Assembly: GCA_965644295.1 (NCBI GenBank)
Contig: CBFFRP010000380.1
Span: 186,001-250,000, forward strand
Source of the DNA: Paraphysomonas bandaiensis
Lineage: Eukaryota; Protista; Chrysophyceae
Direction: 5' to 3'
DNA: 64,000 bases
Position 1 is the first letter of the stretch. Each line of letters begins with the position of its first letter. Positions 40,791 to 64,000 of the stretch are shown here, piece after piece. Under the pieces are notes generated by a model. That model saw nothing but the letters and a program-made list of their open reading frames with translations. It did not search any database and had not been told where the DNA came from. A program made the position numbers and the translations under genes.

Positions 40791-42029
40791 GATGCGGAAT
40801 AAGAGTTCACATTATTTGGCATCTGTGTGGCCAATGACCGAGGTAATACGACAAACTTTCCTCATGGATGGCACTGGTAATGTGATTAGACCAACTGTGT
40901 CTTACCACATGTCCACTACTTTGCCTTGCTTTCTATTGACTTAGTTCTTGGCTATCAAGGCTCTGAGAGTGCTCTTCGAGCAGTGTCAGGTACATTGGTG
41001 TGTTTCATTTTATTTCTTGCTTAGTAGGTTTTCATCCTAGCGGGGACGGTGCAGGGTTTCTTACTAGCGTATGTCACTCGGGAGTAGAGTACAATGTGGA
41101 TGCATGTGCTGGGCACGTGCACACAACATGGAGGGAAGAATTTGTAGCAGATTTCGATAGATGTTTGCTTCATTAGTCAGTGAGACCACTTCGTGACCGT
41201 GGAGGCCCCGGCGCTAGAACTACTCTACTCTCCCCTCCAAACTACCTGCTGCTGTGAACACCAACTTGAAGGGCTCTAAAGATCTGTCGAGGATACGGAC
41301 CGCAAAATATTTGTCAGGATAGATGTTCCTTTAGTACCGCACGAAGTGTTAAGTTGGTTGCGTGGCAACACCCACTTGCGCTTCTTAACAATAAGGCGCT
41401 AATATATACCATATAAGGAAGTGGCAATTGTGTAAAAGTAAATCAGAAGCTACAACAGTATCCACACTCTGCAAAAGAACACTGAAAAATAGCGACTGAG
41501 GATAAAAAGGATTCATGTGATACGATATCGGCATTGTATTCATTATCGTCCTAAAATTCAAACTGATGTATGTTACTACAGAGCATATAAGCCTTCCGTG
41601 GAGAAACGCTGTGTTGCTGATAAGAGGTTGTGATAAATCTGTTGCTCCCCGAACAATTCGACTTAGAATTATAACCTCTCCTATCCGTATACATCTTTTA
41701 CCACTAATCAATGCCTGATACTAATAGGCGTGTAAGAGTCAGAACTAATGTAGTAAAACAATTTAACTAACTAGTGTTTAACTCTGATATCCTACTATTT
41801 AACGCTACGAAAGCTGCTTGTGTCACCAAAAAAGAGAGAGGAGAGGGGATTTCACCCCCTGTACAGTGTTAACCGTGACTATGAAAACTATTAATATACA
41901 CCAACATTGCCCCTATGGTATTACTCTTTATCACTTACAATAATAATGGACATTTAAAGGACACTTTCAAGGACATATTATTTTAATACAAATATATATT
42001 ATTACAATATTGTAACTCACTAGTGAAAT

Positions 42030-42460
42030 AAGAAAGTTCAAAAGGTAGTTGAAAAGGAAGTTCAAAAGGAAGTTGAAAAGAAGTTGAAAGGCAGTTCAAA
42101 AGGTAGTTCAAAAGGTAGTTCAAAAGGTAGTTCAAAAGGTAGTTCAAAAGGTAGTCCAAAAGGTAGTTCGCTTTTAGTTCATAAGGTAGTTCAAAAGGAA
42201 GTACAAGGAAGTTCAAAAGGTAGTTCAAAAGGAAGTTCAAAGAAGTTCGAAGAAGTTGATAAGGTAGTTCAAAAGGAAGTTCATTAGGTAGTTCAAAGGG
42301 AAGTTCAAAGGGAAGTTTAGAAGGAAGTTTAAAGAAGTTCACTAGGTAGTTCAAAAGGAAGTTCATAAAGTAGTCCAACAAGGTAGCTTGCTCTAAGTTC
42401 ATAAGGTAGTTTAAAAGGTAGTTTATCAAGAAGCGTTAATGAAGTCCATATAGGAGTTCA
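42030..42460 (+). repeat. CACTA left subterminal 12-bp repeat array (AAAAGGTAGTTC)
   Basis: Many tandem copies of aaaaggtagttc / aaaaggaagttc. Confidence 0.9.
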
Positions 42461-42725
42461 TTCGGGTGTGTTTTTATATATTAAATAAAAACACTTATTA
42501 TTACGATAGTTTTCACACCTTATAAACACGACTAAATAACAAAAACCAGAAAACTTAAATGCAAAAAAGGAAAAATATACGAACGAAAGTTGGCTTAAAA
42601 ATTGAAATCGTAGTAATTATCTCTTCATTTTCGAAGTGGAACGAAAGAACTGCTCAAGCATGCAACTAAATATCACTTCCTTCTTCTTGATGACTTTTTC
42701 CCTTTCTTCTATATGTATCAGGTTA

Positions 42726-45638
42726 TCAAAAGAGGCAAGTATATAGCATTACATTTGTGGGTGGCTTCGGTTTTCGTGCACTAGAAGTTTTCTTCTGCTG
42801 GGAAACGGAGTCAAAATCCGAGTAGTTGGAGCACTCGTCCTCGTCTTGGTACTCTTCTTTTGCCTTCACTTCATATTTCATATGGGTCCGCCTTCATACA
42901 AAAGTTTATATTATGAGTATCAATCATGTGCATTGTTATATATTTTTTGTACCTTCTAGGTGCACACGTGACACATATCGTCTGTTTCTCATCAGTGCTT
43001 CTGGAATCGAATGTCTCACGGTTCGCACAGTTACATGATACCTTTGCCCCGCAGCCCACACACTCTGTAATGTCCTCTTCTGTATTGAGCTCATCATCCA
43101 AGTCTATATATAACCCACAGTCACGGAAAGGACAAGCGCATCTGACCTGCAAAATGTATCTTATAAAAATTGTGCATGTAAGTATAAATATATATATACT
43201 TTAAAAATATCTACAAAACACAGTACGTTCTGTTGTTACTATTTTTATAAAATTAAACTCTACCAGTACATATATATATATAATATTGCTATTTAACTTA
43301 CCATGTTGGTGTCCACACAATACTCGCCTTTCCTTATCATTGCAGAGCTATCCATATTCTTACTGTAACTTCGGTAATTGCGTTGACAGAATCTTTTGAG
43401 ATCAAGTCTCTTTTTATCGACATCGTCAAGAGAGAAGATATGCACATTAATTTTTTCTTTCACTTCTCGAAGCAATAGATTGTCGTTCAAAATTTCCTTC
43501 ATCCCCAGCTCGATAACTTTGCGCGCATACATCATAATGAAGATTCCACAGTCGTAAGCGTTTTCTTGCTTCGGAACAAAAGTCTGATAAATCACAAATT
43601 TAGGATAATAGTTTGATATAGTGCTATATATATGAAATGTCTTCTTATTTAGCAATATGCATATTATAAGTGTTAGAAAAACTAAACTAAGTGTCATACT
43701 ACATGCATGCATTGTATGTAACTAACATAAAGTCACTTACACTGCAGTTAATGCATGATAAGCGGGTGAAGTCGCTTTGTGTACCAAAAACTTTATGCCA
43801 CTCAAATGCGAGATATCTACAAAGAGTTTGAAATATTATTAAATAGCAAAACGTTAGACATTACGAACCTTTTAATATTGAATGTTATCTCCTTGAATGG
43901 ATGCACCCCCTCCATGGAGTCGAAGTATAGAAGGTAGGACTGATGTTCGATTTCACCATTCGACTTGGAAATTGGATAAGAGTTCGGGCTACATGGATTC
44001 ACATAGCACATGAGGCTCCAATGGCCGGAGAATACGATAGGAAAGAATATGTAATCCTTTTCAAACACATTTTTACTGCGCGTAGTCCATTTGCGTACTC
44101 TCTCGTACGCTTTGGCAGACTGCTCCCCACCTATACTTGGTTCTTCTACAAGCTTTGAGTAGAAGCAGCTTGGAAAGGACTGTATCTTGGAGCATACAAG
44201 GTCGCACGCACTGGAAGGTGAATCGTTAGGGATATTTTCTATTCCTAACTGCCGAAATTCCATGTCTACCAGACTATCATTAAGATTCTTCTGGGGCTCC
44301 AAACGATCAACGTCACGGGCATAAATCTCTATGGCTCCAATAGCCTACGTATCGTAAATTATGACTGCACACTTAGTATTATTAGATCAGCAACCTTCTT
44401 AAATGCGGGGAATTTGAAAAGTGCTTTAGATCCATCATCAAGCTTAGGATCGACATACTCGTCTTGTAGGTCCAATACTTTAAAGGTTGAGGTTGGTGTT
44501 TCAGACTTTGACTTACTCAACTTTGTTGTAGGCAGGCTTGTTACCCCTTGATTATACTGTAACATATATATCATATTATACATATAAAACACATACATAT
44601 AACATATATATGTTTAACATACACATATATAATATAATATATATGTCATAATATTATAGCTACAAAGTTCAAATAGTTTTACACAAAATACATATGTCCT
44701 CAATATTTATCAATTTAAATCTTTCACTCATACTAAAAGTAAGTTCAATACAAACCTTATCCTCAGATATGGATGAATCGTTCTCCTTATCACTTTCGAT
44801 TTTGTCCGTACGCTTCCTTTTGCGACTACCTTTTTTTGTTCCCTATGTCATGCAAATATTTACAAGAGTAGTATAACATTATGAAGCGCACCTTTAGGCC
44901 AATTTTGTATGTGTCAACTACATGTAGATTAGTTATCAACCACCTGAAAATATCAATAATATGAACGTACATCTGTTGTTGCGGATCTCTTTAATCTTCA
45001 GATTTATTTGTGTCGTGATCTTGTCTGGATCACAGCCTGTAAAAATAGCACATTGATAAATGAGTGACGAATATATATATACATATTTACACACATTTAT
45101 ATATTTTAAATACATGAATTCATGCAAATATAATATATCAAAATATACATAACACAGGTATATATGTCAATAACATATACATATTTTTACCACGGACACC
45201 CAGTTTCTTGAGAAGCATGTGAGAAACAATGGGTCCAATTCTCCTAGTCGCCTTTTTGAATTCATGTTCACTCATCACGGCAAACTTGCCGTGAACTACT
45301 ATCTTACCATTCTCACGAATATCAGGCTCACTTATACAGTCTTGGAAATATGTGGAGACTATCGAGTGAAGTAAAGCACTCCATGTCTGCCTGGCAGGAG
45401 TTTTCCCTCTGACGGATAGATGCGCATCGAAGTCTTTTCCAATTAAATCTTCTTTGCCAAGAAACATAAGGGTACAAGTTCTATCGTCGAAGCCTTTCCA
45501 GAGATAAACCCGCGGGGGTTGATCATCATCATTATGTGGGACCTGGCATACACTGATGCCTTCTTCTATTCGAACAATTATATCAAGGATGGTGCTCAAT
45601 TTTTCACCCAACTCATTCAGTGTGTTAATAGGAGACAT
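42726..45638 (-). CDS. CACTA cargo gene: Ulp1/SENP-like C48 cysteine protease with Cys-rich C-terminus, multi-exon (ends approximate)
   Basis: FPSCFYSKL, YERVRKWT, VFEKDYIFFPI, catalytic GHWSL, YFDSM and QENAYDCGIF; C-terminal CxC/CxxC cluster. The 45138-45638 exon may belong to a separate gene. Confidence 0.78.
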
Positions 45639-45971
45639 AATAATATTATCTTATATTGGATGGGATGCCATTTGATGTCTTAATGATATGTATGGAAGTA
45701 TATAGAGAGGAATGAAGGTCCAAGACAACATACAGTCACTTCCATTCCAAGAACATACAATATTCTTTGAAGTTTGCAGTTTGAAAAGAGAGTGCGATCA
45801 GGCAAGAAAATCAAGGTTTTTTAGTTATACAGTACTGTATATACACACATATATATAATATGCTGTTTTTTGATGACCGATATTGTACAGTATATTGTGT
45901 TGGAGATAAAATGGTTTGACCTCATGACTATGATGATGGTTACTTACACAAAACTCTGTTGTTAAAATAAG

Positions 45972-48900
45972 ATGTCAGACAAATATACTCTGATTGAACG
46001 GCTTGTGTTGGCGTTGGATAGTGATGATGATGATTGTGCTCCGTCAACTGTTCCTCATCATCGTGATCGTCATGTCAACAGGATAAATACAATGCTACCA
46101 AATGACATACACACGACAAGTGAACCTGCACCATCAGCACAACATGACAGTACATCCAGTAAGTTTGATACATTTACATCTCCAAGATACGATGCCTTTT
46201 CTGAAGTTGGTGCTGTTAATAAATGGTTTGTTGGATCCCGGAATTTGAAATTGACACATCGCGGTGGATGTAGATCTGGATTAGGAGCCAATCCGCTGTT
46301 TCCAGGTGCAAGCACAAGAATGTCCGAACTGGCGAAATCTATTACAGTACTACGGCACCGATTTCGAGGTCAAATGGGAGATGAGTTGACTGGGGCGATT
46401 GTTGCCTTATTTGCGAAATTTCTGCCTGTAGATAATGCTATTGAGGTGGCACTACGAAAGAAGAACTCAACGTACATTCTCAATGATATAATAATTCAGT
46501 CAATACTTGAAGATAATAATCATATGCCCTGCTCAATATTTGAGAGGTATGGCTATACAGTAATGTACGTCCTTCAACTGAACTAACGCTATAATAGATG
46601 TGTGAACGGATGTCAGACTTTTGCAGGACACAGATCGGAGTACCGTTATTGTAGTAAATGTGGTGAAAAGCGCACAAGCGATCAGAAGTATTTCTACTTC
46701 CCACTTCAAGTACGTCTATTGAAGTTGCTAACTTCTTTCTTGGGGGCATTTTTCCACTATAACGAGTATATGCATTCTCGGACAGACGACACAATATCAG
46801 ACGTGTTTGATGGCATTCGTTGGAAGCAGTTTGAGCAAGAAATGTCCGAGAATGAAAAATTCGTTGGCATTTTGCTTGGGTGGGATAGTGGACAAAAATT
46901 TAATCGAGCACCAGGTAGGTAATAGCTATAACAATTATAAGTTTTATATTATATTTATATTTATTAGATATATATATTCCATACGTATACAATGAAATTT
47001 CGTTTAAACTTATCATAATTGGTCACTTCACTTACTAGGTGAATCATTCTCTCCCATCTTTGTGACAATATTGAATCTTCCTCCTTGTTTGAGAGACAAG
47101 TTGCATGTTGGTTTGTTTATTACATGCTTAGATGATGGAAATCATTACTGTGTTTGGGAAACTTTTGTCAAGGAACTGAATTATTTGTGGAGGGTAGGAA
47201 TAGTTGTGCGTGGCATTAGATACCGATTTGGAATTCTTACCTTTAGTCTAGATCGAAAGGCTACCGAGAGTTTGACTCGGACACAGAATACACAATCCTA
47301 CGCAGGTTGTAATGTGTGCCACTACCCTACCGTAAGGGTCGGAAACTCGCATTGTTTTACGGGGTCAAGGCGAGAATTATCACCTGATCATCCCAAGCGT
47401 AATGGAACGCCACGACATAAGCGGAAGACTGGTAAAGGGCTACAGTTTCGTCAACGTGAAGATGCTCCACCAACAACTAAACGTACATACAATGAGTATT
47501 TACGAAATGCCGAAACAGCTGAATCAAGTGCCAAGAGTGAGCCTTTTGATGGAGTACATGGAGTTTGGGCTTTAAACAAATTGGATTATGCCTCTTTGAT
47601 TCATTGGGGACAAGACGGTATACGTGGCATGCCACTAATCTGAGTCCTAAATTTTATACTTTTTTACGAGCTTCTATCTGTATGCAATAGTTTATTATGC
47701 AAAATAAACTTAGATAAAATATGTGAATATGTAATATATATTATTTGTGTCTTTTTGTGCTGTTAAACTTACCTAATTAATGTAGGCATGCATTTATTGA
47801 TGCACATAGTCGAAGACTCCATGAAAGTACTCAAACGAACTAGAGGGACAAGAAAAAACCGAACTACCACAGATAGTGTCTTGAAATGGTGTCGGGACAA
47901 CGACATTCATGGGGATTTGACTAGCCCCGGTATGATTCATCCAAAGTGGACACTCACTGGAGATGAAGAAATTGAAGTTCAAAAGACAATGCAAGATAAG
48001 CCCTCAGGAGTTCCGTGGACAATGCAATATCCTATACAATACAACGGCGGTTTTTATACGCACGATAAAATAATGTGGGCAGCAAACTACGCCGAAGAAT
48101 GTTTGAGAGGAAAAGGAGATGAACATGTAACCAATAACATCTTAGAATTGTTTGATATGGTCAAAACCGCTATTCAGTTTGAGTTTAGCAAGAAAGAGTT
48201 GAAAGAATCCATAATTCCAAGACTGATTGAAGTTTTGGTAGACCACGAGGGATTGTTACCTCCAACAGGTAGTAGTGAATCTTTACAAAAACTTCAACAT
48301 GTATATAACTGAGGATATATATATGTTTTTAATCAACAGAATCTACAGTTGCTTTTCATGCTATACTACATCTTTTCCGCGATATAGAGATCACTGGCCC
48401 ACCACATCAACTCTGGATGTTTAAATTTGAAAGACAAATAAAAGTCCTTAAAGGCATGATTCGAAACACACGATACCCAGTTGCATCCATGGCCAAAAAT
48501 TATCTGATAGATGAAATGATATGCGTTGATATTGCGACGTCGCTTCCCAATATTTCAGCATTGGACTATTTCTTGGACAATGCACCGAAAACTGTGTCTT
48601 GTACAATACAAGATCTGATCAGCGGTTTAAGTTCTTTGAAGTACATTGACGGAAAGATTGTTAGTTCATATGATTCTCAAAATCGCAAAAAATCTCCCAC
48701 TATTGAAGATATCGATCCCAACCTGATTACATTTTTAACTGATGATATTTGGAATCCCGAGAAAACATTGTTCACAGGCCTAGAATCGCCATCAGAAAGG
48801 TTGCTAAACTTGCAAATAGAAACTAATAACTGTATCGTAGTATGATTTATCATCATGACGACTATTAAATCCTATATTAATTACAACTCAAGTTCATTTG

Positions 48901-49377
48901 TGTACAGAATTTTGCCAGAGTACATTCAACAAAAATATGAAGAAGATATTGATAGTGACGAGCAAGATTCAGATTCGGAGATAATATCTGACTCTTCTGA
49001 ATCGGCTTTTGGTAAGAATATTTCTTGTAAACGGGGGTTATATTTATTTGATTGTTATAATAGAATATGATCATGGCTGGAAAGAAGTGCGAAATCGTCA
49101 AGATTCCAAAGTCGATGAAACATATATCCCTTATTATAAGAGTGCAGCTGAGAAAGTCGGTAAAAAGTTTATAAAAGTCGACACTTCCGAGAAGTATGTT
49201 ATCCGTAGAGTTGTCCAACACTCGGATTATGAAGACTTTTATTTTGCATCCGAGAAAAGCTCTGATCATTTGGGAAATCCACCCAGTACGAGTCAAGTTG
49301 AATTCTTTAAATGCAAGGAACTCATGACCACGAAGCGAAGAAAAAGGAAATTTGAATGGGTAGCACAGTCCCCTTGA
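45972..49377 (+). CDS. CACTA/EnSpm (Tnp2/TnpD-like) transposase, multi-exon
   Basis: FYFPLQVRL, SDVFDGIRWK, LGWDSG, ILNLPP, SLDRKA, GCNVC, QDG|MHL, WMFKFERQIKVLKGMIRNTRYPVASMAKNY (DUF4218-like). 3' exons less certain. Confidence 0.88.
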
Positions 49378-49609
49378 ATTTATATATATTATGATTTATT
49401 TAATCGATGATACATTCTCATTTAATTATATTTCGGCATACATATATATACCATATGAACTGCTTTTTCGTTTTTGATAATTTTGAAATTTCGATGGAAT
49501 TTGAAATCTATTGTATATAATATATATTGTACGTATACAGTACACTTCTCTACCTTATTATCAACTGTTATATTATAAAGTAATAATTATAACTAAAAAT
49601 AATGATGCT

Positions 49610-50045
49610 GTAACATGAACTTCGTTTTCTACTATACCTTTTGAACTACAGTAAATTTCACACTTCCAAATGAACTACCTTATGAACTTTCAGAAAATAT
49701 TAATAAAATTTGTAGGTTTTTAACTATTTTATGAACTGCTCTATGAACTACCTTTACAACTTCCATATTTTACTCATTTTTATGAACTACCTTACGAACT
49801 ACCTTATGAACTTCACCAAAACTGACATTGTAGCATGAACTACCTTATGAACTACCTTTTGAACTTTTTAAAAAAATTTCACACTCTTACACATTTTGAA
49901 CTACCTTATAAACTTCTTTATGAACTACCTTTTCAACTTTCACACTCCACACTTTTTTTATGAACTACTTTTTGAACTACCTTTTGAACTTTTTCGCAGG
50001 ACGTACTACCTTTTGAACTACCTTATGAACTACCTTATGAACTTT
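49610..50045 (-). repeat. CACTA right subterminal repeat array (GAACTACCTT)
   Basis: Reverse complement of the left array motif, many copies. Confidence 0.9.
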
Positions 50046-50404
50046 CTTATTTCACTAGTGACTGTATATACTTATATATGGACACTTTGAAGGACATTTT
50101 TAAGGACATTTTTAACAAAAATATAAAAAAAACACAAAAAAAATGTTGTGAATATAAATTTTAACAAAAAATGTCCAGAAAAATGTCCACTCAAAATATA
50201 CAAAAACACTATAAATACAATAATACAACACTACATATATTACATTGACGGACGGAAACCAAACATAAACACCGAACAACCACACCAGATAGACGGAACA
50301 ATAGACCTGTTTAACACTATATATAGACATGTCGTATTTTACTCCCTATTTTATATATGTAAGAATATAAAACAATTAAAAAAAAAATATATAGTTATAT
50401 TATA

Positions 50405-50836
50405 ATGTCAAAAGAATTAAAATATTTTCATTGTTGTGAAAATGTTGATTCCGAGCGTAACGGTAAGTACTACTACAAACATAAAAAGTACATTCATAAT
50501 GATCCATTTGACTGTCTAAAACATAAGTTAAATAGACCAGCTGATGAAGTCAATGATATAATAAGCAAACGGTTTGAAAAGGGTTTTTTAAGTAGCAATT
50601 TTTTTACTTTTAGACCAGCAAACAATACACCTGAATGTTACGATTGGCATGAAAAATTTATTATTAAATCAGGTTTAAGAGAAAACGAAGGTGATGATGT
50701 TCAAGATGAATTTTATCTTAAAAATAAGTTTTGGGAATCAGTTGTTTACATCATTGAAAATGACGGTGATAAAGAGAAAATGGAAACGGATAAGTGGGTA
50801 TATTCAATGAATGCTATTGATAAACTAACGTTTTAA
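50405..50836 (+). CDS. PLV hypothetical protein A (paralog of 51609-52085)
   Basis: KYFHCCENVD and YIIENDGDKEKM..KW.YS.N..DKL are shared with 51609-52085. Confidence 0.8.
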   Translation: MSKELKYFHCCENVDSERNGKYYYKHKKYIHNDPFDCLKHKLNRPADEVNDIISKRFEKGFLSSNFFTFRPANNTPECYDWHEKFIIKSGLRENEGDDVQDEFYLKNKFWESVVYIIENDGDKEKMETDKWVYSMNAIDKLTF

Positions 50837-55043: not shown

Positions 55044-56549
55044 ATGAGTACAAAAGAGAGTTTTGAAGAGTTTGATTTAGAACACCTTGATAACCTGACC
55101 TATGAACAGTCTAAAGCTTATGTAACAAATTATTTTTTCCCACTTACAAACGGCATGCATGCTTACAGATCAGGAATTAAAACATTTAGCATTATGAAAC
55201 ACCGCGAAATTAAAGAAACTTTTTTTAATAGAATGGATAGAAGAATAAGTAAATATTATTTCAATGAATTTAAAGGGCTTCGCACTGTTGTTTATGAACT
55301 GAATAAGCCTTTATTCCCTGATAAGAAGAAATTAAATTTATGTGCGCAGTATATGCACGACTATAAGCCATATGAAGAATTTGACAACAAGACTAAAGAA
55401 GGTGTTGAAGTATTTTTAACATACATAAAAGAAATTTTAGCCTCTAATAATGAGGATCAAAATGATTATTTATTAAAATGGTTTGCCAATATGATAAAAG
55501 GGAATAAAAACGAATCCATTTTATACCTTAAAGGACCTCAAGGCATAGGCAAGTCCACTATATCCCAATTTTTACATTCTTTCGTTCTTGGTCGTGATTT
55601 ATGTTTAGAAGCTGGCGCAGATGTACTGACCACACGATTTAATTCCGAATTGGCCGGGAAATTATTTGTATATTTTGAAGAAATTGAAAAGCTTACACGT
55701 GCAGATTGGGACGCCGTTAATACTAAATTAAAAAGATATACTACGAGCGACGTTTATATAATAGAATAAAAAGCATGAGTCAACGATATCAGGCTGCAGA
55801 ACCTTAATAATTATTTAATTAATTCAAATGTTGATAGTTTAAATGAAGAATGACGGCAGAACGTATATTTATATGTGATGTAAGTTGTAAAAAACGAAAT
55901 GACTGTACAATATTTTGGAAATGGCTACGAAATATATGCTTTAATAACGAGGTAGGACATGCTTTTTACTGTTATTTGATGGAATATAACACAGAAAAAT
56001 TTTATAGTCAAAACTTTCCAATCACACAAAATAAATTAGACGCATACTGCAAAGAGATTAGGAAGCGTTGAAATGTTTTTAAAGGATGAATTTGTATTAA
56101 AGAGATTGGATATAAATGATATACCTGTTAAAGAAATATTATAATCATTATATCCAGTATTGTGCACAAAATAATATTAAACCAGTTAAACATACAATTG
56201 ATTTTAATAAGGTCATGACGTGAATTAAATTTTATTCACAAACAAGAATAAAGATAGACGTAATGTATACAATATTTCATTAGAAGAATTAGATAAAGTC
56301 GCTGAATCTTTGCACTGGATCCACGAATTAGATGAGTATGACGATGTAGAGATTGAAGATAATACCAACACTATTAAAGGCGCTATTAAAAAACGTTGTA
56401 ATAAACAAAGCGATAAACAAAGCGATAAAACAGATGATGATACAGATACAGATGAAGATACAGATGAAGATGATGATGAAGATGAAACACCCCGTGTAAG
56501 TCAGAAGACAGTAAAGGATATAATGAAAACTTACGGAATAAATATTTAA
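55044..56549 (+). CDS. SF3 (D5/NrS-1-like) helicase, broken by clustered indels at ~55765-56250
   Basis: YLLKWFA, Walker A LKGPQGIGKST, FNSELAGKL, Walker B FVYFEE; downstream frames give INSN, DGR/RIFICDVS, VGHAFY and WIHELD. About 495 aa when joined. Confidence 0.8.
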
Positions 56550-56598: not shown

Positions 56599-56853
56599 AT
56601 GAGAGATAAATTTATAGTAGAAGTATATGATAATAATAATAATCTGATTACATCACAAAACTTTACATCCTATAAGGCAATAGCTCAGGAATACGATATA
56701 CAATATTCAGAAGCTAGGAAACTTAACGCTTTATGTGAGTCACGTACAACATGTAAATACTTACATCCATCATTAAAGCGACTGATTAACAGAATAAAAA
56801 TTTATGATATTAATAATATAGATAGTTATAATATTAAAAAAATAAAAATTTAA
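56599..56853 (+). CDS. Small putative DNA-binding protein (NUMOD1/HTH-like)
   Basis: VEVYDNNNNLI..FTSYKAIAQEYDI pattern; shares the upstream motif of the replication genes. Confidence 0.5.
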   Translation: MRDKFIVEVYDNNNNLITSQNFTSYKAIAQEYDIQYSEARKLNALCESRTTCKYLHPSLKRLINRIKIYDINNIDSYNIKKIKI

Positions 56854-56885
56854 TTATTTAAAAAATTAATATATAGTTTATATTA

Positions 56886-57218
56886 ATGGACAAATATAAA
56901 TATGAAAAGATTGATGAGAAGGACTTTGAAAACTCAGTTGAAATTACGATTAGATTCAGACACAGAAAGAAAGGCAAAGAATTAGACGTTCCCGATATGT
57001 ACTTTTTACATGATATGATTGAGGAAAACTTACCCGAAGATGCCAATACAATGGTTAGAGCGTTAAATGGTCATAGATACTTTACATTTAAAGGGTATAA
57101 CAGCTATAATATAAGGGTTCAGGATTTTGAAAATTATTATAAAGGCACAGTTGAGGAAATGGATAAATTTGAGAAGTTTGAATTTATTGATATATCGGTG
57201 TTCATGTCTACGACATGA
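56886..57218 (+). CDS. PLV hypothetical protein
   Basis: 110-aa ORF with the shared upstream motif. Confidence 0.7.
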   Translation: MDKYKYEKIDEKDFENSVEITIRFRHRKKGKELDVPDMYFLHDMIEENLPEDANTMVRALNGHRYFTFKGYNSYNIRVQDFENYYKGTVEEMDKFEKFEFIDISVFMSTT

Positions 57219-57309: not shown

Positions 57310-58539
57310 ATGAGCTATATATTATTTTGTCGTTTGCTTTCCGGTTTTAGAATATTTGACCCAATCGCTAAAGAATTTAAGACCATAAATAAATATCCTA
57401 GTGAACATCACAGCTTTGAATTGATGAAAGGATATAAACCAACTGACGAAGACTTAAAAAGATATGCAGAGGATTTTAAAAAGTGGTGCGATGAACTAAA
57501 GGACCCTGAAAATTTTCTTACTATAGACTATTCTAATTATGTTTCTCATTCATACGCAGTGAGAAATACATATAAACGCATGAAAACGAATAAGTTCAAA
57601 GATGTAAAGGAAATAACATTTAGTAAAATACTTAAAACAGAACACCATTATTTTTCAATGTGTAATAATGGTCCTTTAATGTACTGTGAGAAATATGAGG
57701 GGCCAAGTTATGGATATGATTATAAACAGTATTACCCAACTATTTTAGCTGCTAAAACTTTTCAAGTACCCACTAAAAAAGGTAAAGCTATGGCCCTTGA
57801 TACAGAAAAAATAATTTCTGATGGTGAAAATTTGCCATATGGTTTTTATTTCGTCGGAATCACGTCTAAGAATCCAAACGCTAAAAAGATATTTTCATTC
57901 TCAAAAAAAGATTTATATACCCATTATTCTGTTCAATTCGCATGGAAATATAAAGACACGTTTAATTTTGAGTTTGAATTTTATGATAAAGATCAAAATA
58001 ATTGCTATGTATATGATGAGGCAGATTTAGTACCTGGGTCGCTTGTTTTTGGTAATTGGAAAAATAAGCTGACTAAATTACGTAAAAAATACCCTAAAAA
58101 CAAATTATTAAAACACTTATTAAGCTCTGCTTGGGGTCAATTTACCGGCTATAAAGCCATATATAAAACATATTCAGACATAAAAAAAGAGGGTTTAGAT
58201 GTAGGACCAACACTAAAAAGTGATTATGTGGTATTAGATCATCATAAAACACCTACAGAAGATTATTATAAACTATATTCAGCTAAAGACCCCTATAAAA
58301 TGGGGGAAGCGCGTATAAAATCGTTTATGTCATCGTTCGCACGTATTAGAATAGCTGAAACGGCAATATATGGCGGTATAGATGACGTAATAAGAATACA
58401 CACGGACAATGTTACATTTAAATGTAACAAAGATGAAAAAATGAAAAATAGGAAAATAGAACCTGAACCTGATACAACAGGTTATTTAAGATGGGAAAGT
58501 GTTATTAAGAAACCTATTAGGCTCGGAGAGATTGATTAA
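57310..58539 (+). CDS. Short divergent family B DNA polymerase (palm/fingers only)
   Basis: Motif A YGYDYKQYYPTIL, motif B KHLLSSAWGQF, motif C VIRIHTDNVTF; 409 aa; no recognisable Exo I/II/III motifs. Confidence 0.78.
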   Translation: MSYILFCRLLSGFRIFDPIAKEFKTINKYPSEHHSFELMKGYKPTDEDLKRYAEDFKKWCDELKDPENFLTIDYSNYVSHSYAVRNTYKRMKTNKFKDVKEITFSKILKTEHHYFSMCNNGPLMYCEKYEGPSYGYDYKQYYPTILAAKTFQVPTKKGKAMALDTEKIISDGENLPYGFYFVGITSKNPNAKKIFSFSKKDLYTHYSVQFAWKYKDTFNFEFEFYDKDQNNCYVYDEADLVPGSLVFGNWKNKLTKLRKKYPKNKLLKHLLSSAWGQFTGYKAIYKTYSDIKKEGLDVGPTLKSDYVVLDHHKTPTEDYYKLYSAKDPYKMGEARIKSFMSSFARIRIAETAIYGGIDDVIRIHTDNVTFKCNKDEKMKNRKIEPEPDTTGYLRWESVIKKPIRLGEID

Positions 58540-59378
58540 GCTTTAATCAGTTCATCCGCTGAGTAGGAAGCATTCTTAATACCAGACACCATATAACGGT
58601 ATAATACTTTACCACTATATATTAATATCTGTTCTATTTCCCTAACTTTAGAATCATAACGATAATCTCCAGTTCTAAACTTACCAGATTGAACCTTATT
58701 TAATGCATCTTTAGGTTTATCTAGTATAACATGGACTTTATCACCGATTTTAAATTTAGGTTTTATTAATTTGCCTTTCTTTGTTGTTGTAGGCAATTCA
58801 TATTTATCGGGGTTTAGTTTCTTTCTACGGGACTTATTCAATAATATACGTATTTCGTCAATATGATCTGTCCACTGTTTATAAGGCTTTCCTGTTTCCT
58901 CCTCATATTTATTTGCTATTCCATTAAACAAGCTGTTTAATTGATTAATTAAATTATCTATTGGTGCCATCTGCTTATGTCTGCCTGGTACTGTTACTTT
59001 ATGATAAATACTATCTTCATATAACCATTTCTTAAATATACCTCGGAACTCTGTACCTGCGTCAGTTGTTAAAGAGTATTTCGGTTTATCAAGATACTCA
59101 CGCTTAAACATCTTTTTTATTGCCTTATGTGTTGTATCCGCGTCCTTATGTTTCATAGGCTCCATATCAAACTCATTATTAGCTAAATCAAGACATACTA
59201 AAAGATATTTATACCCAAATTTAGCAGTAGGCAAATACATGATATCGGCCATATAATTATAATGCTCGTGTTGTGGTACATTATCCCTAAAATTACTATG
59301 TTTCTTTTTTTTCTTTGGTACTGATGTTAATTTTTCATTAATACCAAGTTGTTTTTTAATATCTGCTAATGTTGACAT
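58536..59378 (-). CDS. Retroviral-type (rve) integrase
   Basis: YMADIMYLP, YKYLLVCLD, TTDAGTEF, RHKQMAPIDN; Polinton-like C-terminal KFKIGDKV. Its stop overlaps the PolB stop (TTAA). Confidence 0.88.
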   Translation of the reverse strand: MSTLADIKKQLGINEKLTSVPKKKKKHSNFRDNVPQHEHYNYMADIMYLPTAKFGYKYLLVCLDLANNEFDMEPMKHKDADTTHKAIKKMFKREYLDKPKYSLTTDAGTEFRGIFKKWLYEDSIYHKVTVPGRHKQMAPIDNLINQLNSLFNGIANKYEEETGKPYKQWTDHIDEIRILLNKSRRKKLNPDKYELPTTTKKGKLIKPKFKIGDKVHVILDKPKDALNKVQSGKFRTGDYRYDSKVREIEQILIYSGKVLYRYMVSGIKNASYSADELIKA

Positions 59379-59435: not shown

Positions 59436-59903
59436 TTATTCGGCTTGTGATCTCATCAACACACATTTTGAAAAAAAACGGAATAGCTTTTTAATATTTC
59501 TCTTAATAAATTTATTCTGTTTCAATCTGGGCATTAAAACAGGTATAGATAATTCTACTAATGTTTCATCATCATTAAAGTATTCTTTTACACATTCTAT
59601 TACGACCTGTTGTTTATATTCGCCTGCGCCCTTTTCTAATATATAGTTTTCTACACATTGCATTACAAATAACATAATACTATAGCTATATTTATAAGTA
59701 TCTTTATCAAATAATGCTAAAACACTTTTAATTTTATTAATAAATTCAGTTTGTGAATTATTCATTTTAATATCATATATTTTTTCTCTTAATCCTTCTA
59801 ATTCAGATGTTAAAATAAAATCTTGGTTCTTTGGTAGTTCGCTAATAATCCATTCATTTTGTTTTTGCTCTTCAGTTTCTACTGCTCGTTTTCTGCGTGA
59901 CAT
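59436..59903 (-). CDS. PLV hypothetical helical protein
   Basis: 155-aa ORF with tatatATG start context. Confidence 0.7.
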   Translation of the reverse strand: MSRRKRAVETEEQKQNEWIISELPKNQDFILTSELEGLREKIYDIKMNNSQTEFINKIKSVLALFDKDTYKYSYSIMLFVMQCVENYILEKGAGEYKQQVVIECVKEYFNDDETLVELSIPVLMPRLKQNKFIKRNIKKLFRFFSKCVLMRSQAE

Positions 59904-59922
59904 ATATAATAAGAATATATTT

Positions 59923-61008
59923 TTATTTTCTCTTTTTGTTTCTCTTTTTCTTTGGTGTTATTGGTTGTGGTTCTTCCTCTGGTTGTGGCTCTGGTTTATA
60001 AAATATTTTTTTAATAAGTGAGTTTTTAGTTGAATTACCTTTAATACTTATACCTAAACTTTTAGCATATTTCTTTACTTCATCAAGTTCCATATTATTT
60101 AAATCATCTTTAGTTAGTGTTGTTTGTTCTTCCTTGGTTTCTTCTTCCTCGTAATCGTCAGGTAATTCTTCTACTCTGGGTTCATCTTCTGCATCATTAT
60201 TATCTACATTATCATTCCACTCAGATTTAGCAACATCTACATTATCTTCCTCATGAAATAAATTAACCTCTACAGGTTTTTCATTCTTTATTAATGGCTC
60301 TTTATGTTCTCCTGCACTTGATAAACTGGGCTGTTCTTTAGGTTCACTCTTATATTCACTACTTGCTAAAGGTGTACTAGCTGAAAAATCACCTATGCCA
60401 TCATGTCTACCAATCTCAACTATTTTCGCTTTATTTACTGACCCTTTAGGACGTCCTACAGGTTTAGGAGTCTTTGGCCGTGCAATATCTCCAATTGTAA
60501 ATGAACCGTTCTTATGTTGTTTAAATGATCGTTTGCCTTCTTGTATATCGTCGCCCAATCGTTCTGCGATAGAGTGAAAAGTAGATTTATGCTTTTTCTC
60601 AGGTTCTTTATTATTATCTCCTAATCCTATTAATCTATTATTCACTTTATTTAATTCGCCTCGTAATGTGTCTACTTCTCGTGTTAATGCATTTCTAGCG
60701 CCTGTGTTGTTCATTTTATTTAATTCGCCTCGTAATGTGTCTACTTCTCGTGTTAATACACTTGCTCCAGTATTGGGGAAAACACTAGCACTTGTGTTAG
60801 AGATCGGTACACCTGCGTTTGTAAAACGTGAGGCTGTAACATGGTCACGCATATTGGGATTATGTTTTATTGGGTCAAAAGCCGCAGCAGTATTATTAGC
60901 CTTCGTCGCTTTCTTCTTCGCTTTCTTTTTCTTTCTCTTTGCTTTCTTCTTATCTTCTTTTATCAGTTTTTTAATATCATCTAATGTTAATTTGAATTCT
61001 TTCACCAT
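59923..61008 (-). CDS. Lys-rich protein with AT-hook, internal repeat and HeH/Rho-N-like C-terminus
   Basis: KPVGRPKGS; LTREVDTLRGELNK twice; DLNNMELDEVKKYAKSLGI..KNSLIKKI. Confidence 0.7.
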   Translation of the reverse strand: MVKEFKLTLDDIKKLIKEDKKKAKRKKKKAKKKATKANNTAAAFDPIKHNPNMRDHVTASRFTNAGVPISNTSASVFPNTGASVLTREVDTLRGELNKMNNTGARNALTREVDTLRGELNKVNNRLIGLGDNNKEPEKKHKSTFHSIAERLGDDIQEGKRSFKQHKNGSFTIGDIARPKTPKPVGRPKGSVNKAKIVEIGRHDGIGDFSASTPLASSEYKSEPKEQPSLSSAGEHKEPLIKNEKPVEVNLFHEEDNVDVAKSEWNDNVDNNDAEDEPRVEELPDDYEEEETKEEQTTLTKDDLNNMELDEVKKYAKSLGISIKGNSTKNSLIKKIFYKPEPQPEEEPQPITPKKKRNKKRK

Positions 61009-61046
61009 TATTATAATATAACAAAATAAAATAATAATAATAATAA

Positions 61047-61592
61047 TTAATAAAAATAGTCATGTGGATTAAATGCGGGTTGTTGTCTCACTTGTTGCTT
61101 TTGCTTTTGTTTACGCATATGAATATATTGAATTTCATCCTCTGACTCATCGCTTTCTGTATCGCTCTCTGTCTCACTTTCTGACTCATATATAATTCTT
61201 TTTATTGGTTTCTTCTTTGGTTTCTTTTTCTTCTTTTTATAAATAACTTCCTCTTCTTCGCTCTCTGTCTCACTCTCATATTCATCCTCCTCCTCGCTCT
61301 CACTTTCCTCCACTACAGGCTTTTTATTCTTCTTCTTTTCCTCTTGTTTTTTTGCCCATATCTCCGCTAATCTTTCCTCCTTCTCTCTCTTTTTCTCTTC
61401 CAATTTCTCCTTTCTCTTTAATTGTGCCTTCTCAAATGCTTTTTTTTGTGCTTCTGATCGCACTTTACGCCTATTTGGTTTTTCAACTGGTTCTTTCTTA
61501 GGACGTCCAACCTTCTTTTTTGTTAATGGTGCTTCATCCTCACTAGTCTTAATATTATCTATATCGGATTCGTAAACGTCTTTTTCTTCCAT
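61047..61592 (-). CDS. Low-complexity Lys/Glu protein with AT-hook
   Basis: KKKVGRPKK; alternating basic and acidic (ESESE) tracts; divergent from the ATPase. Confidence 0.7.
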   Translation of the reverse strand: MEEKDVYESDIDNIKTSEDEAPLTKKKVGRPKKEPVEKPNRRKVRSEAQKKAFEKAQLKRKEKLEEKKREKEERLAEIWAKKQEEKKKNKKPVVEESESEEEDEYESETESEEEEVIYKKKKKKPKKKPIKRIIYESESETESDTESDESEDEIQYIHMRKQKQKQQVRQQPAFNPHDYFY

Positions 61593-61643
61593 GCTTATAT
61601 ATATAAATATAGAAAAAAATATTTTTTTATAGTATATTATTAT

Positions 61644-62396
61644 ATGCCAAGCAAAAAGAAAAATAAATATAATATAGTTGAAATTAATAATGATTTACCA
61701 GAGACAGAGCCGATTAAAGAACATTTCGGTGTATATATAGACGATATAAATCCAAATTTGCCACGGAGGAACGGGACTATATGGGCTATATGTGGTAAAG
61801 GTGGATCGGGTAAGACATCATTATTTTTAAGTTTGTTTAAATCCAAGAAGTTATTAAGGGCAAAATTTGACGAAGTGCATTATATAGTAAATTCTACTTC
61901 ATTTAATTCGGCCAAAAGCAATCCATTTAAAGACCATGAAAATATACACCATGAATTAACACCTGACCTATTACACGATATTCATGAGGATGCCTTACAA
62001 CGTCGCGAAGAATGTATAGAAATGAATGTAGAATGTGAACATACTTGTATTGTAATTGATGATTTCGGAGCTATGTTAAAGGAATATGAAATAGAACACG
62101 CATTAAAGAAAATCATGAATGTCGCCAGACATGCAAATTTATACATAGTGTTTATTGTACAGACCTTTAGAATGATACCAATGGAATTAAGACGTATTTT
62201 AACACATGTATCACTTTTTAAACCAAATCCTGAGGAATGGAGTATAATAAAGCAAGAAATGATTATAGATAATCCTGATAAGTTGGAAGCTATATATAAG
62301 TATGTTTTTAGTCAGCCTTATAATCACCTAGACTTATATTTAAAGGAAAATGAGATACGAAAAAATTTTAAATTATTACAAATTGATAGTATATAA
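61644..62396 (+). CDS. A32-like FtsK/HerA DNA packaging ATPase
   Basis: Walker A ICGKGGSGKT, Walker B CIVIDD, ARH arginine finger, FIVQ, ELRR. Confidence 0.9.
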   Translation: MPSKKKNKYNIVEINNDLPETEPIKEHFGVYIDDINPNLPRRNGTIWAICGKGGSGKTSLFLSLFKSKKLLRAKFDEVHYIVNSTSFNSAKSNPFKDHENIHHELTPDLLHDIHEDALQRREECIEMNVECEHTCIVIDDFGAMLKEYEIEHALKKIMNVARHANLYIVFIVQTFRMIPMELRRILTHVSLFKPNPEEWSIIKQEMIIDNPDKLEAIYKYVFSQPYNHLDLYLKENEIRKNFKLLQIDSI

Positions 62397-62414
62397 TATC
62401 TGTTCTAATAATAT

Positions 62415-63356
62415 ATGAAAGACTTTTATACAGATGAAACTTTTACTTATGTGATTGATACAAATAATATGGTATGGGGCGGTGATAATGCTGACTGTGA
62501 AATTCCAATGTTAGGCGTGTTACCGTCAGACGTTGAATATTTTATATGCTGCCCTATATTCTTTAATTCGTCCAGTCTTGTGTTATCACATCCTCCATCG
62601 TCAGCTATAGTTTTAGAGGCCAAAGATTTTATTGAAACAGGATTTAGTACACATAATAACAGCTCATATAAAGCTATTACACCTCCTATATATGCAGCTA
62701 ATACAAATCACGGCACAGGATTATTTAATAATTTAAGTAATATGGTATATGTTGTAAAAAACTTTAATAATAAGACCATACGTTTTACAATGCGTAATTG
62801 TGAAGGATTTGAACAGGATGTAATAGCTAATGGCGGATATAAAAAACACTGGACTTTAACATTAAGCTTAACTCCTATTAGGGATAAGGTTCCAAGATAT
62901 ATAAAAAATAATAGTTCATTTACATATACAATTACAAATGTAAATGCTGTGGGTAGTGCTAATGATTGTTATATTACTTTACCAACGATTAATGATAATT
63001 ACAATAGCTATTTTGTAGATGTTGTCAACTTTAAAATAAATGCTGACTCTTTAACGACTGGTCAGGATAGATATATTAATTTATATGCTTTTAACTGGGC
63101 TGAAAATGGGTATAGTGGTTATTATAAATATACTGACAGGATGTTAATCGCTGCACCATATATAAAAGCTACAGGTAACCCTAATTATTTTGCTGGTAAT
63201 GGATCAGTATTTAAAATATCCAATATGAAACAACAGAGATATATACGGTTTAAAATGTATTATCCTTATATAGGTAGTGAAGTCCCGAGCGGACATATTG
63301 ATAATGGCGAAACAACATATTATTATATAACGTGTATTATTAGGGGAATAAATTAA
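62415..63356 (+). CDS. Protein with two tandem beta-rich penton-like domains
   Basis: FTYVIDT..ADCEI and FTYTITN..NDCYI repeats, each closing with KN....IRF.M and an aromatic final strand. Confidence 0.7.
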   Translation: MKDFYTDETFTYVIDTNNMVWGGDNADCEIPMLGVLPSDVEYFICCPIFFNSSSLVLSHPPSSAIVLEAKDFIETGFSTHNNSSYKAITPPIYAANTNHGTGLFNNLSNMVYVVKNFNNKTIRFTMRNCEGFEQDVIANGGYKKHWTLTLSLTPIRDKVPRYIKNNSSFTYTITNVNAVGSANDCYITLPTINDNYNSYFVDVVNFKINADSLTTGQDRYINLYAFNWAENGYSGYYKYTDRMLIAAPYIKATGNPNYFAGNGSVFKISNMKQQRYIRFKMYYPYIGSEVPSGHIDNGETTYYYITCIIRGIN

Positions 63357-63385
63357 TTTTATTTTCTATAATAATTATATATATA

Positions 63386-63862
63386 ATGGAAAATATGCAT
63401 AGTTTTACTTATACTATCTCTTCTGCTAATGCTAATAGTGGAAATGCCGAAGATTGTTATATAGATTTGCGACCTTTATCTTATAATTATGAGTATTATA
63501 ATGTACAATGCACCGGCTTTATTATGAATTGTGAAAGCATGGACCAAGCAACAATGCCTAATTATGTGCATTTAGTAGCAGATGATTTGGCAGAAAATGG
63601 TTATTATCAGGGTTTTGATTCTAATCAGTGCGTAGTTTCTCATTTATTAACTCATTCTTCAGTGTCACAAATGACTAGCGGCGAAGGTAGCATATTTAGG
63701 GTTAAAAATATGCGACAACAAAGAAGAATAAGATTTAGATTATATGCACCTGATTTAACACCATTAAGTGGCGTTGTAGATGATTCCGATACTACATATT
63801 GGTGTATATCACTGTTGTTTACTCCGGTTATTACCGCACCAGCAAATTTAGAGCTGAACTAA
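63386..63862 (+). CDS. Protein with one copy of the same penton-like domain
   Basis: FTYTISS..EDCYI, AENGY, GSIFRVKNMRQQRRIRF, YWCISLLFTP; close to domain 2 of 62415-63356. Confidence 0.72.
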   Translation: MENMHSFTYTISSANANSGNAEDCYIDLRPLSYNYEYYNVQCTGFIMNCESMDQATMPNYVHLVADDLAENGYYQGFDSNQCVVSHLLTHSSVSQMTSGEGSIFRVKNMRQQRRIRFRLYAPDLTPLSGVVDDSDTTYWCISLLFTPVITAPANLELN

Positions 63863-64000
63863 ATCAATATGGGTTTTCCAAAATATAGAACCTGAGCCTA
63901 CAGTTTGGAAATTATTATATGTATGTATTTCAAAAGTCCAATTATCGGCAACATCATTTATAGTAAATATCAATGGTGCTAATGTACATCCAACACAGCT
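63848..64000 (-). CDS. 3' end of a further PLV ORF entering from outside the window
   Basis: Open frame SCVGCTLAPLIFTINDVADNWTFEIHTY...IDLVQL then stop; overlaps the convergent ORF by 15 nt. Confidence 0.55.
   Translation of the reverse strand, partial: SCVGCTLAPLIFTINDVADNWTFEIHTYNNFQTVGSGSIFWKTHIDLVQL

What the first reader, a model, noticed from the sequence alone, without database searches (positions are those of the whole stretch)
41833..64000. Apparently intact endogenous Polinton-like virus with an atypical gene set
Seen: an intronless AT-rich block with MCP, penton, packaging ATPase, SF3 helicase, PolB and integrase inside an intron-rich host chromosome. Known: protist genomes carry integrated PLVs and virophages. 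Inference: the combination of minimal PolB, primase-less helicase, DDD integrase and multiple penton-like genes differs from canonical Polintons and mavirus, and may define an undescribed lineage able to form particles.
Basis: partly seen in the sequence, partly recalled or inferred. Interest (0 to 1): 0.9.

Follow-up and report, generated by a model that had tools for sequence, protein, structure and literature searches.

The report
Decaying endogenous polinton-like virus, transposon-interrupted
A small capsid-encoding DNA virus of the polinton-like kind is integrated in a marine eukaryote's chromosome, but this copy has a broken helicase gene and an 8-kb host transposon inside its left end, and its gene set matches viruses already common in aquatic metagenomes, so it is real but fairly ordinary.

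Summary
The viral genes are real. The major capsid protein models as a double jelly-roll. One penton protein, an A32-type packaging ATPase, an SF3 helicase, a 409-aa phi29-like PolB without exonuclease motifs and a D-D-D rve integrase are all present.

- a ~190-bp left terminal piece of the virus (about 41824-42017);
- an 8,043-bp CACTA/EnSpm-type transposon (42018-50060) with perfect CACTAGTG termini and a 3-bp ACT duplication, carrying its own Ulp1 protease and transposase;
- the AT-rich, intron-free viral block (50061-64000), which runs off the window.

The copy is not intact. The helicase gene is in at least five stop-free pieces (at least 2 frameshifts and at least 2 in-frame stops), and the transposon splits the left end.

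The gene set is not atypical. One metagenomic contig carries orthologues of nearly all genes. The helicase / small genes / short PolB / integrase cassette recurs in dozens of aquatic contigs, and PLV capsids combined with PolB and RVE are already published.

The capsid module is 96-99% identical to Tara Oceans contigs and shows purifying selection.

Only one of the "multiple penton-like" genes is supported.

Verdict: a new member of a known kind, of moderate interest as a host-virus link.

The parts
41824..42017 (.). Left terminal non-coding piece of the PLV, cut off from the rest by the transposon. The true host/virus junction lies somewhere in 41824-41948.
   Evidence: GC is 31.4%, like the PLV. 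The 12-mer tandem motif GGACAYTTNNAAG occurs only here and at 50080-50115 (expected 0.01). A 45-bp host repeat, also present near 4277-4325, ends at 41823.
42018..50060 (+). Nested CACTA/EnSpm-type DNA transposon (8,043 bp). It is not part of the viral gene set.
   Evidence: Its 23-nt termini starting CACTAGTG are identical in inverted orientation. It has a 57-nt TIR and arrays of the 12-mer AGTTCAAAAGGT at both ends in inverted orientation (34 matches, 0.02 expected). The 3-bp ACT is duplicated at 42015-42017 and 50061-50063. GC is 35.8%.
43293..44302 (-). Ulp1/C48 cysteine protease gene of the transposon, in two ORF pieces (probably two exons).
   Evidence: Pfam Peptidase_C48 at 2.5e-10 and 3.1e-5, covering successive parts of the profile.
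45972..49377 (+). Transposase-like region of the transposon, several ORF pieces.
   Evidence: Weak Pfam hits in the expected order: Transposase_21 (tnp2) E 0.033, then DUF4218 E 0.025.
50061..50404 (.). PLV non-coding leader, with three copies of the 12-mer at 50080-50115.
50405..50836 (+). 143-aa protein of unknown function, paralogue of 51609-52085.
   Evidence: 41% identity, E 4e-25. No homologue in any fetched locus.
50876..51205 (+). 109-aa coiled-coil protein, weak paralogue of 51285-51569.
51285..51569 (+). 94-aa coiled-coil protein.
51609..52085 (+). 158-aa protein, paralogue of 50405-50836.
52179..52409 (+). 76-aa conserved small protein that overlaps the start of the penton gene.
   Evidence: 42-48% identical to genes in the same position in L001, L004 and L005.
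52348..53085 (+). Penton (minor capsid) protein, 245 aa.
   Evidence: Pfam DUF5901 at 2.4e-7. Its profile hits PBCV-1 P1v1 (8h2i_bG) at E 1.2e-5. Homologues occur in 56 of 62 loci.
53116..53556 (+). 146-aa basic protein conserved between the penton and MCP genes.
53605..54960 (+). [quoted passage not shown]
55044..56549 (+). SF3 (D5-like) helicase without a primase domain. It is a pseudogene with at least 2 frameshifts and at least 2 in-frame stops.
   Evidence: Its first stop-free piece hits DUF5906 at 1.8e-10. Set against intact relatives of 510-535 aa it falls into 5-6 stop-free pieces.
56599..56853 (+). 84-aa protein of the replication module.
   Evidence: Orthologues in L004 and L069.
56886..57218 (+). 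110-aa protein of the replication module.
   Evidence: Found next to the short PolB in 20 of 53 metagenomic loci.
57310..58539 (+). Short family-B DNA polymerase, 409 aa: palm, fingers and thumb after an N-terminal region of ~100-120 aa with no exonuclease motifs.
58536..59378 (-). rve-family integrase, 280 aa, D-D-D triad, no chromodomain.
   Evidence: Pfam rve at 8.3e-8; alignment A6.
59436..59903 (-). 155-aa conserved protein.
59923..61008 (-). 361-aa Lys/Glu-rich protein with a weak SAP-like C-terminus.
61047..61592 (-). 181-aa charged protein.
61644..62396 (+). A32/FtsK-type genome-packaging ATPase, 250 aa.
   Evidence: Pfam Pox_A32 at 1.9e-15.
62415..63356 (+). 313-aa protein made of two copies of a ~150-aa domain.
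   Evidence: Alignment A5; likeness to pentons not significant.
63386..63862 (+). 158-aa protein holding the third copy of that domain.
63863..64000 (-). Last 46 codons of a further gene that continues beyond the window.
   Evidence: An open frame on the minus strand. ENA contig L117 continues it to at least 260 aa.

Best explanation
This is one integrated copy of a polinton-like virus in the chromosome of a marine eukaryote, probably a unicellular one.

Inferred from its families, the virus works as follows. An rve-type (D-D-D) integrase inserts the linear genome. A short, exonuclease-less, phi29-like family-B polymerase replicates it together with a separate SF3 helicase and two small conserved proteins. 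A double jelly-roll capsid with one penton protein forms and is filled by an A32-type ATPase. Nearly every gene carries its own AT-rich promoter-like motif just upstream of its ATG.

This particular copy is decaying. Its helicase gene is a pseudogene, and a host CACTA-type transposon has landed in its left terminal non-coding region, putting 8 kb between the terminal ~190 bp and the rest. Close relatives of its capsid module still circulate in the ocean under purifying selection.
For: Shown:
- Gene identities.
- Transposon anatomy: identical termini, 3-bp duplication, subterminal arrays, and the same 12-mer on both flanks.
- Helicase disruptions, counted against seven intact relatives: L063 and six more.
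- All other genes match the lengths of their orthologues.
- The gene set is shared with L004, L053 and L001.
- The replication/integration cassette is widespread.
- Complete relatives with ~98-nt TIRs are 15.7 and 18.4 kb long.
- Tara contig L007 is 96.7-99.5% identical over the penton / 146-aa / MCP genes, with 33 synonymous against 6 nonsynonymous codon changes in the MCP.
- The promoter-like motif occurs at 7 gene starts, against 0.24 expected in the whole window.

Inferred:
- The replication and integration mechanism, from the families involved.
- That the transposon arrived after integration, because 8 kb extra would not fit a capsid sized for a genome of about 16-18 kb.
Against: - The right end, the TIRs and the target-site duplication are not in the window, so integration by the element's own integrase is not shown.
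- The left junction is only bracketed, to 41824-41948.
- Stops and frameshifts in endogenous viruses can be assembly artefacts (PMC10120064). That is unlikely here, because all four or more disruptions fall in one gene out of ~12.7 kb of coding sequence.
- No 100% identical MCP came back from the homology search (best 98%, ENA) and the exact look-up found none on record. This is only a weak indication that the MCP is not expressed; the host transcriptome itself was not searched.
- The host species was not identified.
Confidence: 0.85

Rival explanations
1. The element is an intact, competent provirus. On this view the helicase disruptions are sequencing or assembly errors in AT-rich homopolymers.
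For: All other genes are open and full length compared with their orthologues. The capsid genes show purifying selection against environmental copies. PMC10120064 reports such artefacts in endogenous viral elements.
Against: At least 4 disruptions are concentrated in one 1.5-kb gene and none in the other ~11 kb of coding sequence. In addition, the 8-kb transposon with perfect termini and a target-site duplication sits inside the terminal region, and an assembly error would not create that.
Confidence: 0.08
2. The junction is a chimeric assembly of free viral DNA, or DNA of a co-cultured organism, with a host contig. On this view it is not a true integration.
For: Composition changes abruptly. 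The right junction is not visible. Near-identical sequences occur in seawater metagenomes.
Against: A cellular-type, intron-bearing CACTA transposon with a clean 3-bp duplication lies inside the viral terminal region. This argues that the element has resided in a nuclear genome. The element also carries an integrase.
Confidence: 0.04
3. The block is a fragment of a larger endogenous giant-virus (NCLDV) insertion, or a mavirus-type virophage, rather than a PLV.
For: The MCP fold is closest to NCLDV capsids, some relatives have weak Pfam Capsid_N hits, and the penton resembles PBCV-1 P1. The exonuclease-less PolB + S3H + RVE combination recalls mavirus (PMC11161782).
Against: Relatives are complete linear genomes of 15-19 kb with TIRs. 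Pfam finds no other NCLDV hallmark genes and no cysteine protease in 50061-64000. The MCP has no sequence-level match to virophage capsids: Sputnik and other virophage MCPs appear only as generic fold matches at 10-12% identity.
Confidence: 0.03

Closest known systems
Polinton-like viruses with a 'Polinton configuration' (pPolB + RVE integrase) reported from lakes, oceans and protist genomes (PMC7805220, PMC10120064; class Aquintoviricetes in bioRxiv 10.64898/2026.10.13.758929)
   Same: DJR MCP, one SJR penton, an A32 ATPase and no maturation protease. Size class of ~15-19 kb in complete relatives. An rve integrase paired with a PolB. Integration in a protist genome as a low-GC island.
   Different: The named PLV group was not determined; BFVD holds no close named relative. 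The PolB is only ~400 aa and stands alone. Two paralogue pairs at the left end have no homologues in any fetched locus.
Metagenomic contigs L004 (ENA ERZ27332993 k141_684291, 15.2 kb) and L053 (IMGVR_UViG_3300032303_002320, 18.4 kb)
   Same: L004 has orthologues of the 76, 245, 146, MCP, 84, 110, 409, integrase, 155, 361, 181, ATPase and three-domain genes, at 29-63% identity. L053 shares the helicase / small / small / PolB / convergent integrase order.
   Different: In the window the penton/146/MCP block sits next to the helicase rather than after the ATPase. The helicases of L004 and L053 are not detectably similar to the window's. The 389-442-aa gene that follows the MCP in L001, L004 and L005 is absent from the window.
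Mavirus-type virophages (replication module)
   Same: An exonuclease-poor protein-primed-type PolB, a separate SF3 helicase and an RVE integrase (PMC11161782).
   Different: Mavirus PolB is described as TP-vOTU-palm, whereas the window's has only ~100-120 aa before the palm. The capsid genes are of PLV type, not virophage type, and there is no cysteine protease.
Polintons/Mavericks
   Same: A PolB plus an rve integrase, a DJR capsid and a packaging ATPase.
   Different: There is no full-length TP-vOTU-Exo-Pol polymerase and no Ulp1/adenain protease in the viral block; the only Ulp1 gene belongs to the nested transposon. The MCP's close relatives are aquatic PLV-type contigs.
CACTA/EnSpm DNA transposons (for 42018-50060)
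   Same: CACTA termini, a 3-bp target-site duplication, subterminal repeat arrays, weak tnp2 and DUF4218 signals, and a captured Ulp1 protease gene.
   Different: The transposase match to Pfam is below threshold. No second copy is present in this window.

Membership tests
Polinton-like virus (PLV) | [quoted passage not shown] | tested here: met
   AF2 model pLDDT 86, pTM 0.87. Foldseek matches PBCV-1, SGIV, PRD1 and Sputnik MCPs at E 1e-17 to 1e-13.
Polinton-like virus (PLV) | Single jelly-roll penton (minor capsid) protein | tested here: met
   Pfam DUF5901 at 2.4e-7. The profile of 28 relatives hits PBCV-1 P1v1 at E 1.2e-5. The fold itself was not modelled.
Polinton-like virus (PLV) | FtsK/A32-type packaging ATPase | tested here: met
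   Pfam Pox_A32 at 1.9e-15.
Polinton-like virus (PLV) | MCP clusters with PLV MCPs rather than Polinton or virophage MCPs | tested here: inconclusive
   All 236+ sequence relatives are unnamed aquatic metagenome or IMG/VR proteins on 15-19-kb contigs with PLV gene content. No tree against named PLV groups could be built.
Polinton-like virus (PLV) | Linear genome of ~14-40 kb bounded by terminal inverted repeats | not testable with these tools
   The right end is beyond the window. Relatives L048 and L011 have ~98-nt TIRs.
Polinton/Maverick | Full-length protein-primed PolB with an exonuclease domain (TP-vOTU-Exo-Pol) | tested here: not met
   The protein is 409 aa. The polymerase motifs A, B and C are invariant in the family, but no conserved exonuclease motif lies in the first ~120 residues.
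Polinton/Maverick | rve-family integrase | tested here: met
   Pfam rve at 8.3e-8; D45 and D106 are invariant, and the third acidic residue is D here and in L004 but E in L053, L048 and L001.
Polinton/Maverick | Ulp1/adenain-type maturation protease within the element | tested here: not met
   No protease hit among the 21 ORFs of 50405-63862. The C48 gene at 43293-44302 lies inside the CACTA transposon.
Mavirus-type virophage | Virophage-type MCP and cysteine protease | tested here: not met
   No sequence match to virophage capsids: Sputnik and other virophage MCPs appear only as generic fold matches at 10-12% identity. No protease was found.
CACTA/EnSpm transposon (nested element) | 5'-CACTA...TAGTG-3' termini with TIRs | tested here: met
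   The 23-nt termini are identical and the TIR is 57 nt at 91%.
CACTA/EnSpm transposon (nested element) | 3-bp target-site duplication | tested here: met
   ACT lies directly on both sides.
CACTA/EnSpm transposon (nested element) | Transposase of the tnp2/TnpD family | tested here: inconclusive
   Transposase_21 at E 0.033 and DUF4218 at E 0.025, in the right order but below the Pfam cut-offs.

The most novel reading that the evidence does not exclude
The S3H helicase / 84-aa / 110-aa / ~400-aa palm-only PolB / rve integrase cassette may be a distinct, widespread replication-integration module that has not been formally described. In it the terminal-protein (priming) function would be carried by one of the small separate proteins instead of an N-terminal domain of the polymerase, and the cassette would move between unrelated capsid modules. 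A second, smaller possibility is that the three conserved ~150-aa domains (313-aa + 158-aa proteins) form a new pseudo-trimeric vertex or spike component.
Probability: 0.2. Interest if true: 0.55.

Novelty: new member of a known kind. Interest (0 to 1): 0.33.

Why it matters
Hosts of most aquatic polinton-like viruses are unknown. Here a capsid module 96-99% identical to Tara Oceans contigs sits in an assembled eukaryotic chromosome, which gives a concrete host link for one environmental lineage.

The nested CACTA element and the single decayed gene show the order of events after endogenisation. The sharp fall in identity right after the MCP gene illustrates module exchange between such viruses.

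None of this changes what is known about the class. It adds a well-resolved example.

Tried and rejected
- Pfam, direct PDB sequence searches and a PDB profile search gave nothing for the MCP, the PolB or the integrase core. Only the fold searches identified the MCP and the PolB.
- BFVD gave only generic DJR matches, so it placed the MCP in no named PLV group.
- Profile-profile comparison of the 150-aa repeat domain with pentons gave probability 4-7%, and it had no PDB hit.
- The helicases of L004 and L048 were too distant to map the window's helicase. L063 and the metagenomic relatives served instead.
- Close-relative scans of IMG/VR with the MCP and of JGI metagenomes with the PolB found nothing, and one profile was too loose to scan with.
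- A scan of IMG/VR for the terminal 12-mer found nothing, and the left terminal pieces had no match in any locus. The ends remain undefined.
- The host species was not identified. The host MS-channel exon is 100% identical to a transcript in JGI dataset 3300017004, which I take from memory, unverified, to be an MMETSP-type culture transcriptome. The next relatives are ~44% identical and unnamed, and a literature search for the dataset id found nothing.
- tRNA, Rfam and bacterial promoter/terminator scans found nothing relevant.
I noticed this later, deleted nothing, and give no such places in this report.

Full report
**What is in the interval**

Host DNA up to 41823 is 40.4% GC, 42018-50060 is 35.8%, and 50061-64000 is 29.8%. 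Only the last part is the ORF-dense, intron-free block: 94% of 50405-63862 is coding.

**The nested transposon**

The middle part, 42018-50060, is a separate mobile element.
- It begins and ends with the same 23 nt, starting CACTAGTG, in inverted orientation and without a mismatch.
- It has a 57-nt TIR.
- It carries arrays of the 12-mer AGTTCAAAAGGT at both ends in inverted orientation: 34 matches against 0.02 expected.
- It is flanked directly by ACT on both sides.
- It encodes a Ulp1/C48 protease on the minus strand and several plus-strand ORF pieces with weak, correctly ordered hits to Transposase_21 and DUF4218.

These are the marks of a CACTA/EnSpm transposon with a 3-bp target-site duplication.

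**The transposon lies inside the virus, not beside it**

- Both flanks are AT-rich.
- Both flanks carry tandem copies of another 12-mer, GGACAYTTNNAAG, which occurs nowhere else in the window (3 matches against 0.01 expected).
- A 45-bp host repeat that also occurs near 4277-4325 ends at 41823. The viral left end therefore lies between 41824 and 41948.

**Gene identities**

- The MCP (53605-54960) has no Pfam or PDB sequence match, but more than 236 homologues in public metagenomes. Its AlphaFold model (pLDDT 86, pTM 0.87) matches PBCV-1 Vp54, the SGIV MCP, PRD1 P3 and the Sputnik MCP at E 1e-17 to 1e-13.
- The 245-aa protein is a penton. It hits DUF5901, and a profile of 28 relatives hits the PBCV-1 penton variant P1v1 at E 1.2e-5.
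- The ATPase hits Pox_A32 at 1.9e-15.
- The integrase hits rve. It has invariant D45 and D106, and a third acidic residue that is D here and in L004 but E in three other relatives. It lacks the chromodomain that those three carry.
- The 409-aa protein has no Pfam or PDB sequence match. It belongs to a family with 1087 cluster representatives, mostly ~400 aa long. Its model (pLDDT 92) is closest to phi29 DNA polymerase (E 2e-8).
  - Residues matching polymerase motifs A, B and C are invariant, but nothing like the exonuclease motifs is conserved in the first ~120 residues.
  - Longer relatives (694-695 aa) align only over their last ~275 residues.
  - "Minimal PolB" is thus a fair description.
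- The helicase's first stop-free piece hits DUF5906, the S3H core, and no primase domain.

**State of the copy**

- The orthologues of the other conserved genes have matching lengths.
- The helicase gene (55044-56549) is broken. Set against seven intact relatives, L063 (470-aa ORF) and six of 510-535 aa, it falls into 5-6 stop-free pieces. There are 2-4 changes of frame and 1-2 joins that need an in-frame stop: at least two frameshifts and at least two stops by the most frequent count.
- Four or more disruptions in one 1.5-kb gene, and none in the other ~11 kb of coding sequence, is not the pattern of random assembly error. PMC10120064 warns that such artefacts do occur, so read-level confirmation is still needed.
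- The element also runs off the window. The last 138 bases are the end of a minus-strand gene. ENA contig L117 is 92.8% identical over 63368-63995 and extends that gene to at least 260 aa, with no Pfam match.
- Completeness, TIRs and the target-site duplication therefore cannot be judged here.
- With the transposon in its terminal region, "apparently intact" does not hold.

**Is the gene set atypical?**

It is not.
- Contig L004 (15.2 kb, ENA) carries orthologues of nearly every conserved gene at 29-63% identity.
- L004 and L053 (IMG/VR, 18.4 kb) share the order helicase, two small genes, short PolB, convergent integrase.
- Of 54 IMG/VR loci with this MCP type (30-41% identity), nearly all have the MCP / penton / ATPase trio. 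Two of them (L053, L048), plus the ENA contigs L004 and L001, also carry the PolB-integrase pair.
- Conversely, of 53 JGI metagenome loci with the short PolB, 28 carry the integrase, 20 the 110-aa gene and 10 the window-type helicase. In those loci no homologue of the window's MCP was detected.
- The cassette is therefore a common module that combines with different capsid modules.
- Relatives L048 and L011 have ~98-nt TIRs and are 18.4 and 15.7 kb long.

The literature already describes the parts of this picture:
- PLV-type capsids with pPolB and RVE (PMC7805220);
- an exonuclease-poor pPolB with a separate S3H in mavirus (PMC11161782);
- a PolB / DDE-integrase correlation with stand-alone SF3 helicases (bioRxiv 10.64898/2026.10.13.758929);
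- endogenous PLVs across protists, including one with a retrotransposon nested inside (PMC10120064).

**The "multiple penton-like genes"**

- The 313-aa and 158-aa proteins consist of two copies and one copy of a ~150-aa domain.
- The three closest relatives also have exactly three copies, arranged as 2+1 or fused into one protein.
- Profile comparison with pentons gives only 4-7% probability, limited to the first strand region. There is no PDB hit.
- This reading is therefore unproven.

**Links to the environment and the host**

- Two metagenome contigs are 95-97% identical to 52717-55426. One is from Tara Oceans (L007, PRJEB4352).
- In the MCP, 33 codon differences are synonymous and 6 are not, which indicates purifying selection since the divergence.
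- Identity drops from 96.7-99.5% to 78.9% immediately after the MCP gene, in the helicase. This marks a module boundary.
- The host gene at 5264-7252 is 100% identical to a spliced transcript in JGI dataset 3300017004. The host is thus a marine eukaryote with short introns; its species was not determined.
- Nothing suggests an animal or crop host.

**How it most likely works**

- Shown: capsid, packaging, polymerase, helicase and integrase genes of known families.
- Shown: a promoter-like motif, AAAAAAW then 2-12 nt then TATAGT, lies at seven gene starts and nowhere else in 64 kb (0.24 expected).
- Inferred: integrase-mediated insertion of a linear genome with TIRs. Replication by the short PolB with the S3H helicase, possibly primed by a separately encoded small protein. 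Gene-by-gene transcription from the element's own short promoters.
- Inferred: the CACTA element arrived after integration, because 8 kb extra would exceed a capsid sized for a genome of about 16-18 kb.
- This copy, lacking a working helicase and with its left end split, is most likely a decaying provirus (confidence 0.85).

**Verdict**

This is a new member of a known kind. Its value is a concrete host link for an oceanic PLV lineage and a clean example of a nested transposon and of module exchange.

Noticed in passing
window 9763-15269: Copia-type LTR retrotransposon with a 1484-aa uninterrupted polyprotein ORF (10040-14494) and two 294-nt LTRs that are 100% identical, so it inserted recently.
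   Followed up: partly
window 41776-41823 and about 4277-4325 (minus strand): A ~45-bp sequence is repeated in inverted orientation 37 kb apart, with a 30-nt exact core. It ends just before the viral left piece. Its nature is unknown.
   Followed up: partly
window 52801-55426 vs L007 (Tara Oceans contig): Identity is 96.7-99.5% over the penton, 146-aa and MCP genes, but 78.9% over the first 384 nt of the helicase gene. This sharp boundary suggests exchange of the replication module.
   Followed up: partly
L118 (Tara Oceans contig) vs window 57247-57586: The contig matches the PolB upstream region and 5' end at 98.5% for 340 nt, then diverges completely. It is either a recombinant relative or a metagenome chimera.
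   Followed up: no
window 50405-52085: Four genes form two paralogue pairs in the order A-B-B-A (143/158 aa at 41% identity; 109/94 aa coiled-coil). Two of them have near-identical upstream regions. None has a homologue in the 118 fetched loci.
   Followed up: partly
L001 11364-12692, L004 11426-12706, L005 6192-7361: A conserved 389-442-aa gene follows the MCP in the three closest relatives but has no counterpart anywhere in the window. It may lie beyond base 64000 or be lost.
   Followed up: partly
window 50378-50395, 51259-51273, 53084-53107, 53577-53600, 56860-56877, 57285-57301, 61613-61633: A conserved AT-rich motif (A6-7, 2-12 nt, TATAGT) lies 10-30 nt upstream of seven viral start codons, 7 sites against 0.24 expected. 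Replication genes and capsid genes carry slightly different versions.
   Followed up: partly
L005 7361-7807 (minus strand): In relative L005 the single-domain gene of the 150-aa repeat family contains one in-frame stop.
   Followed up: no
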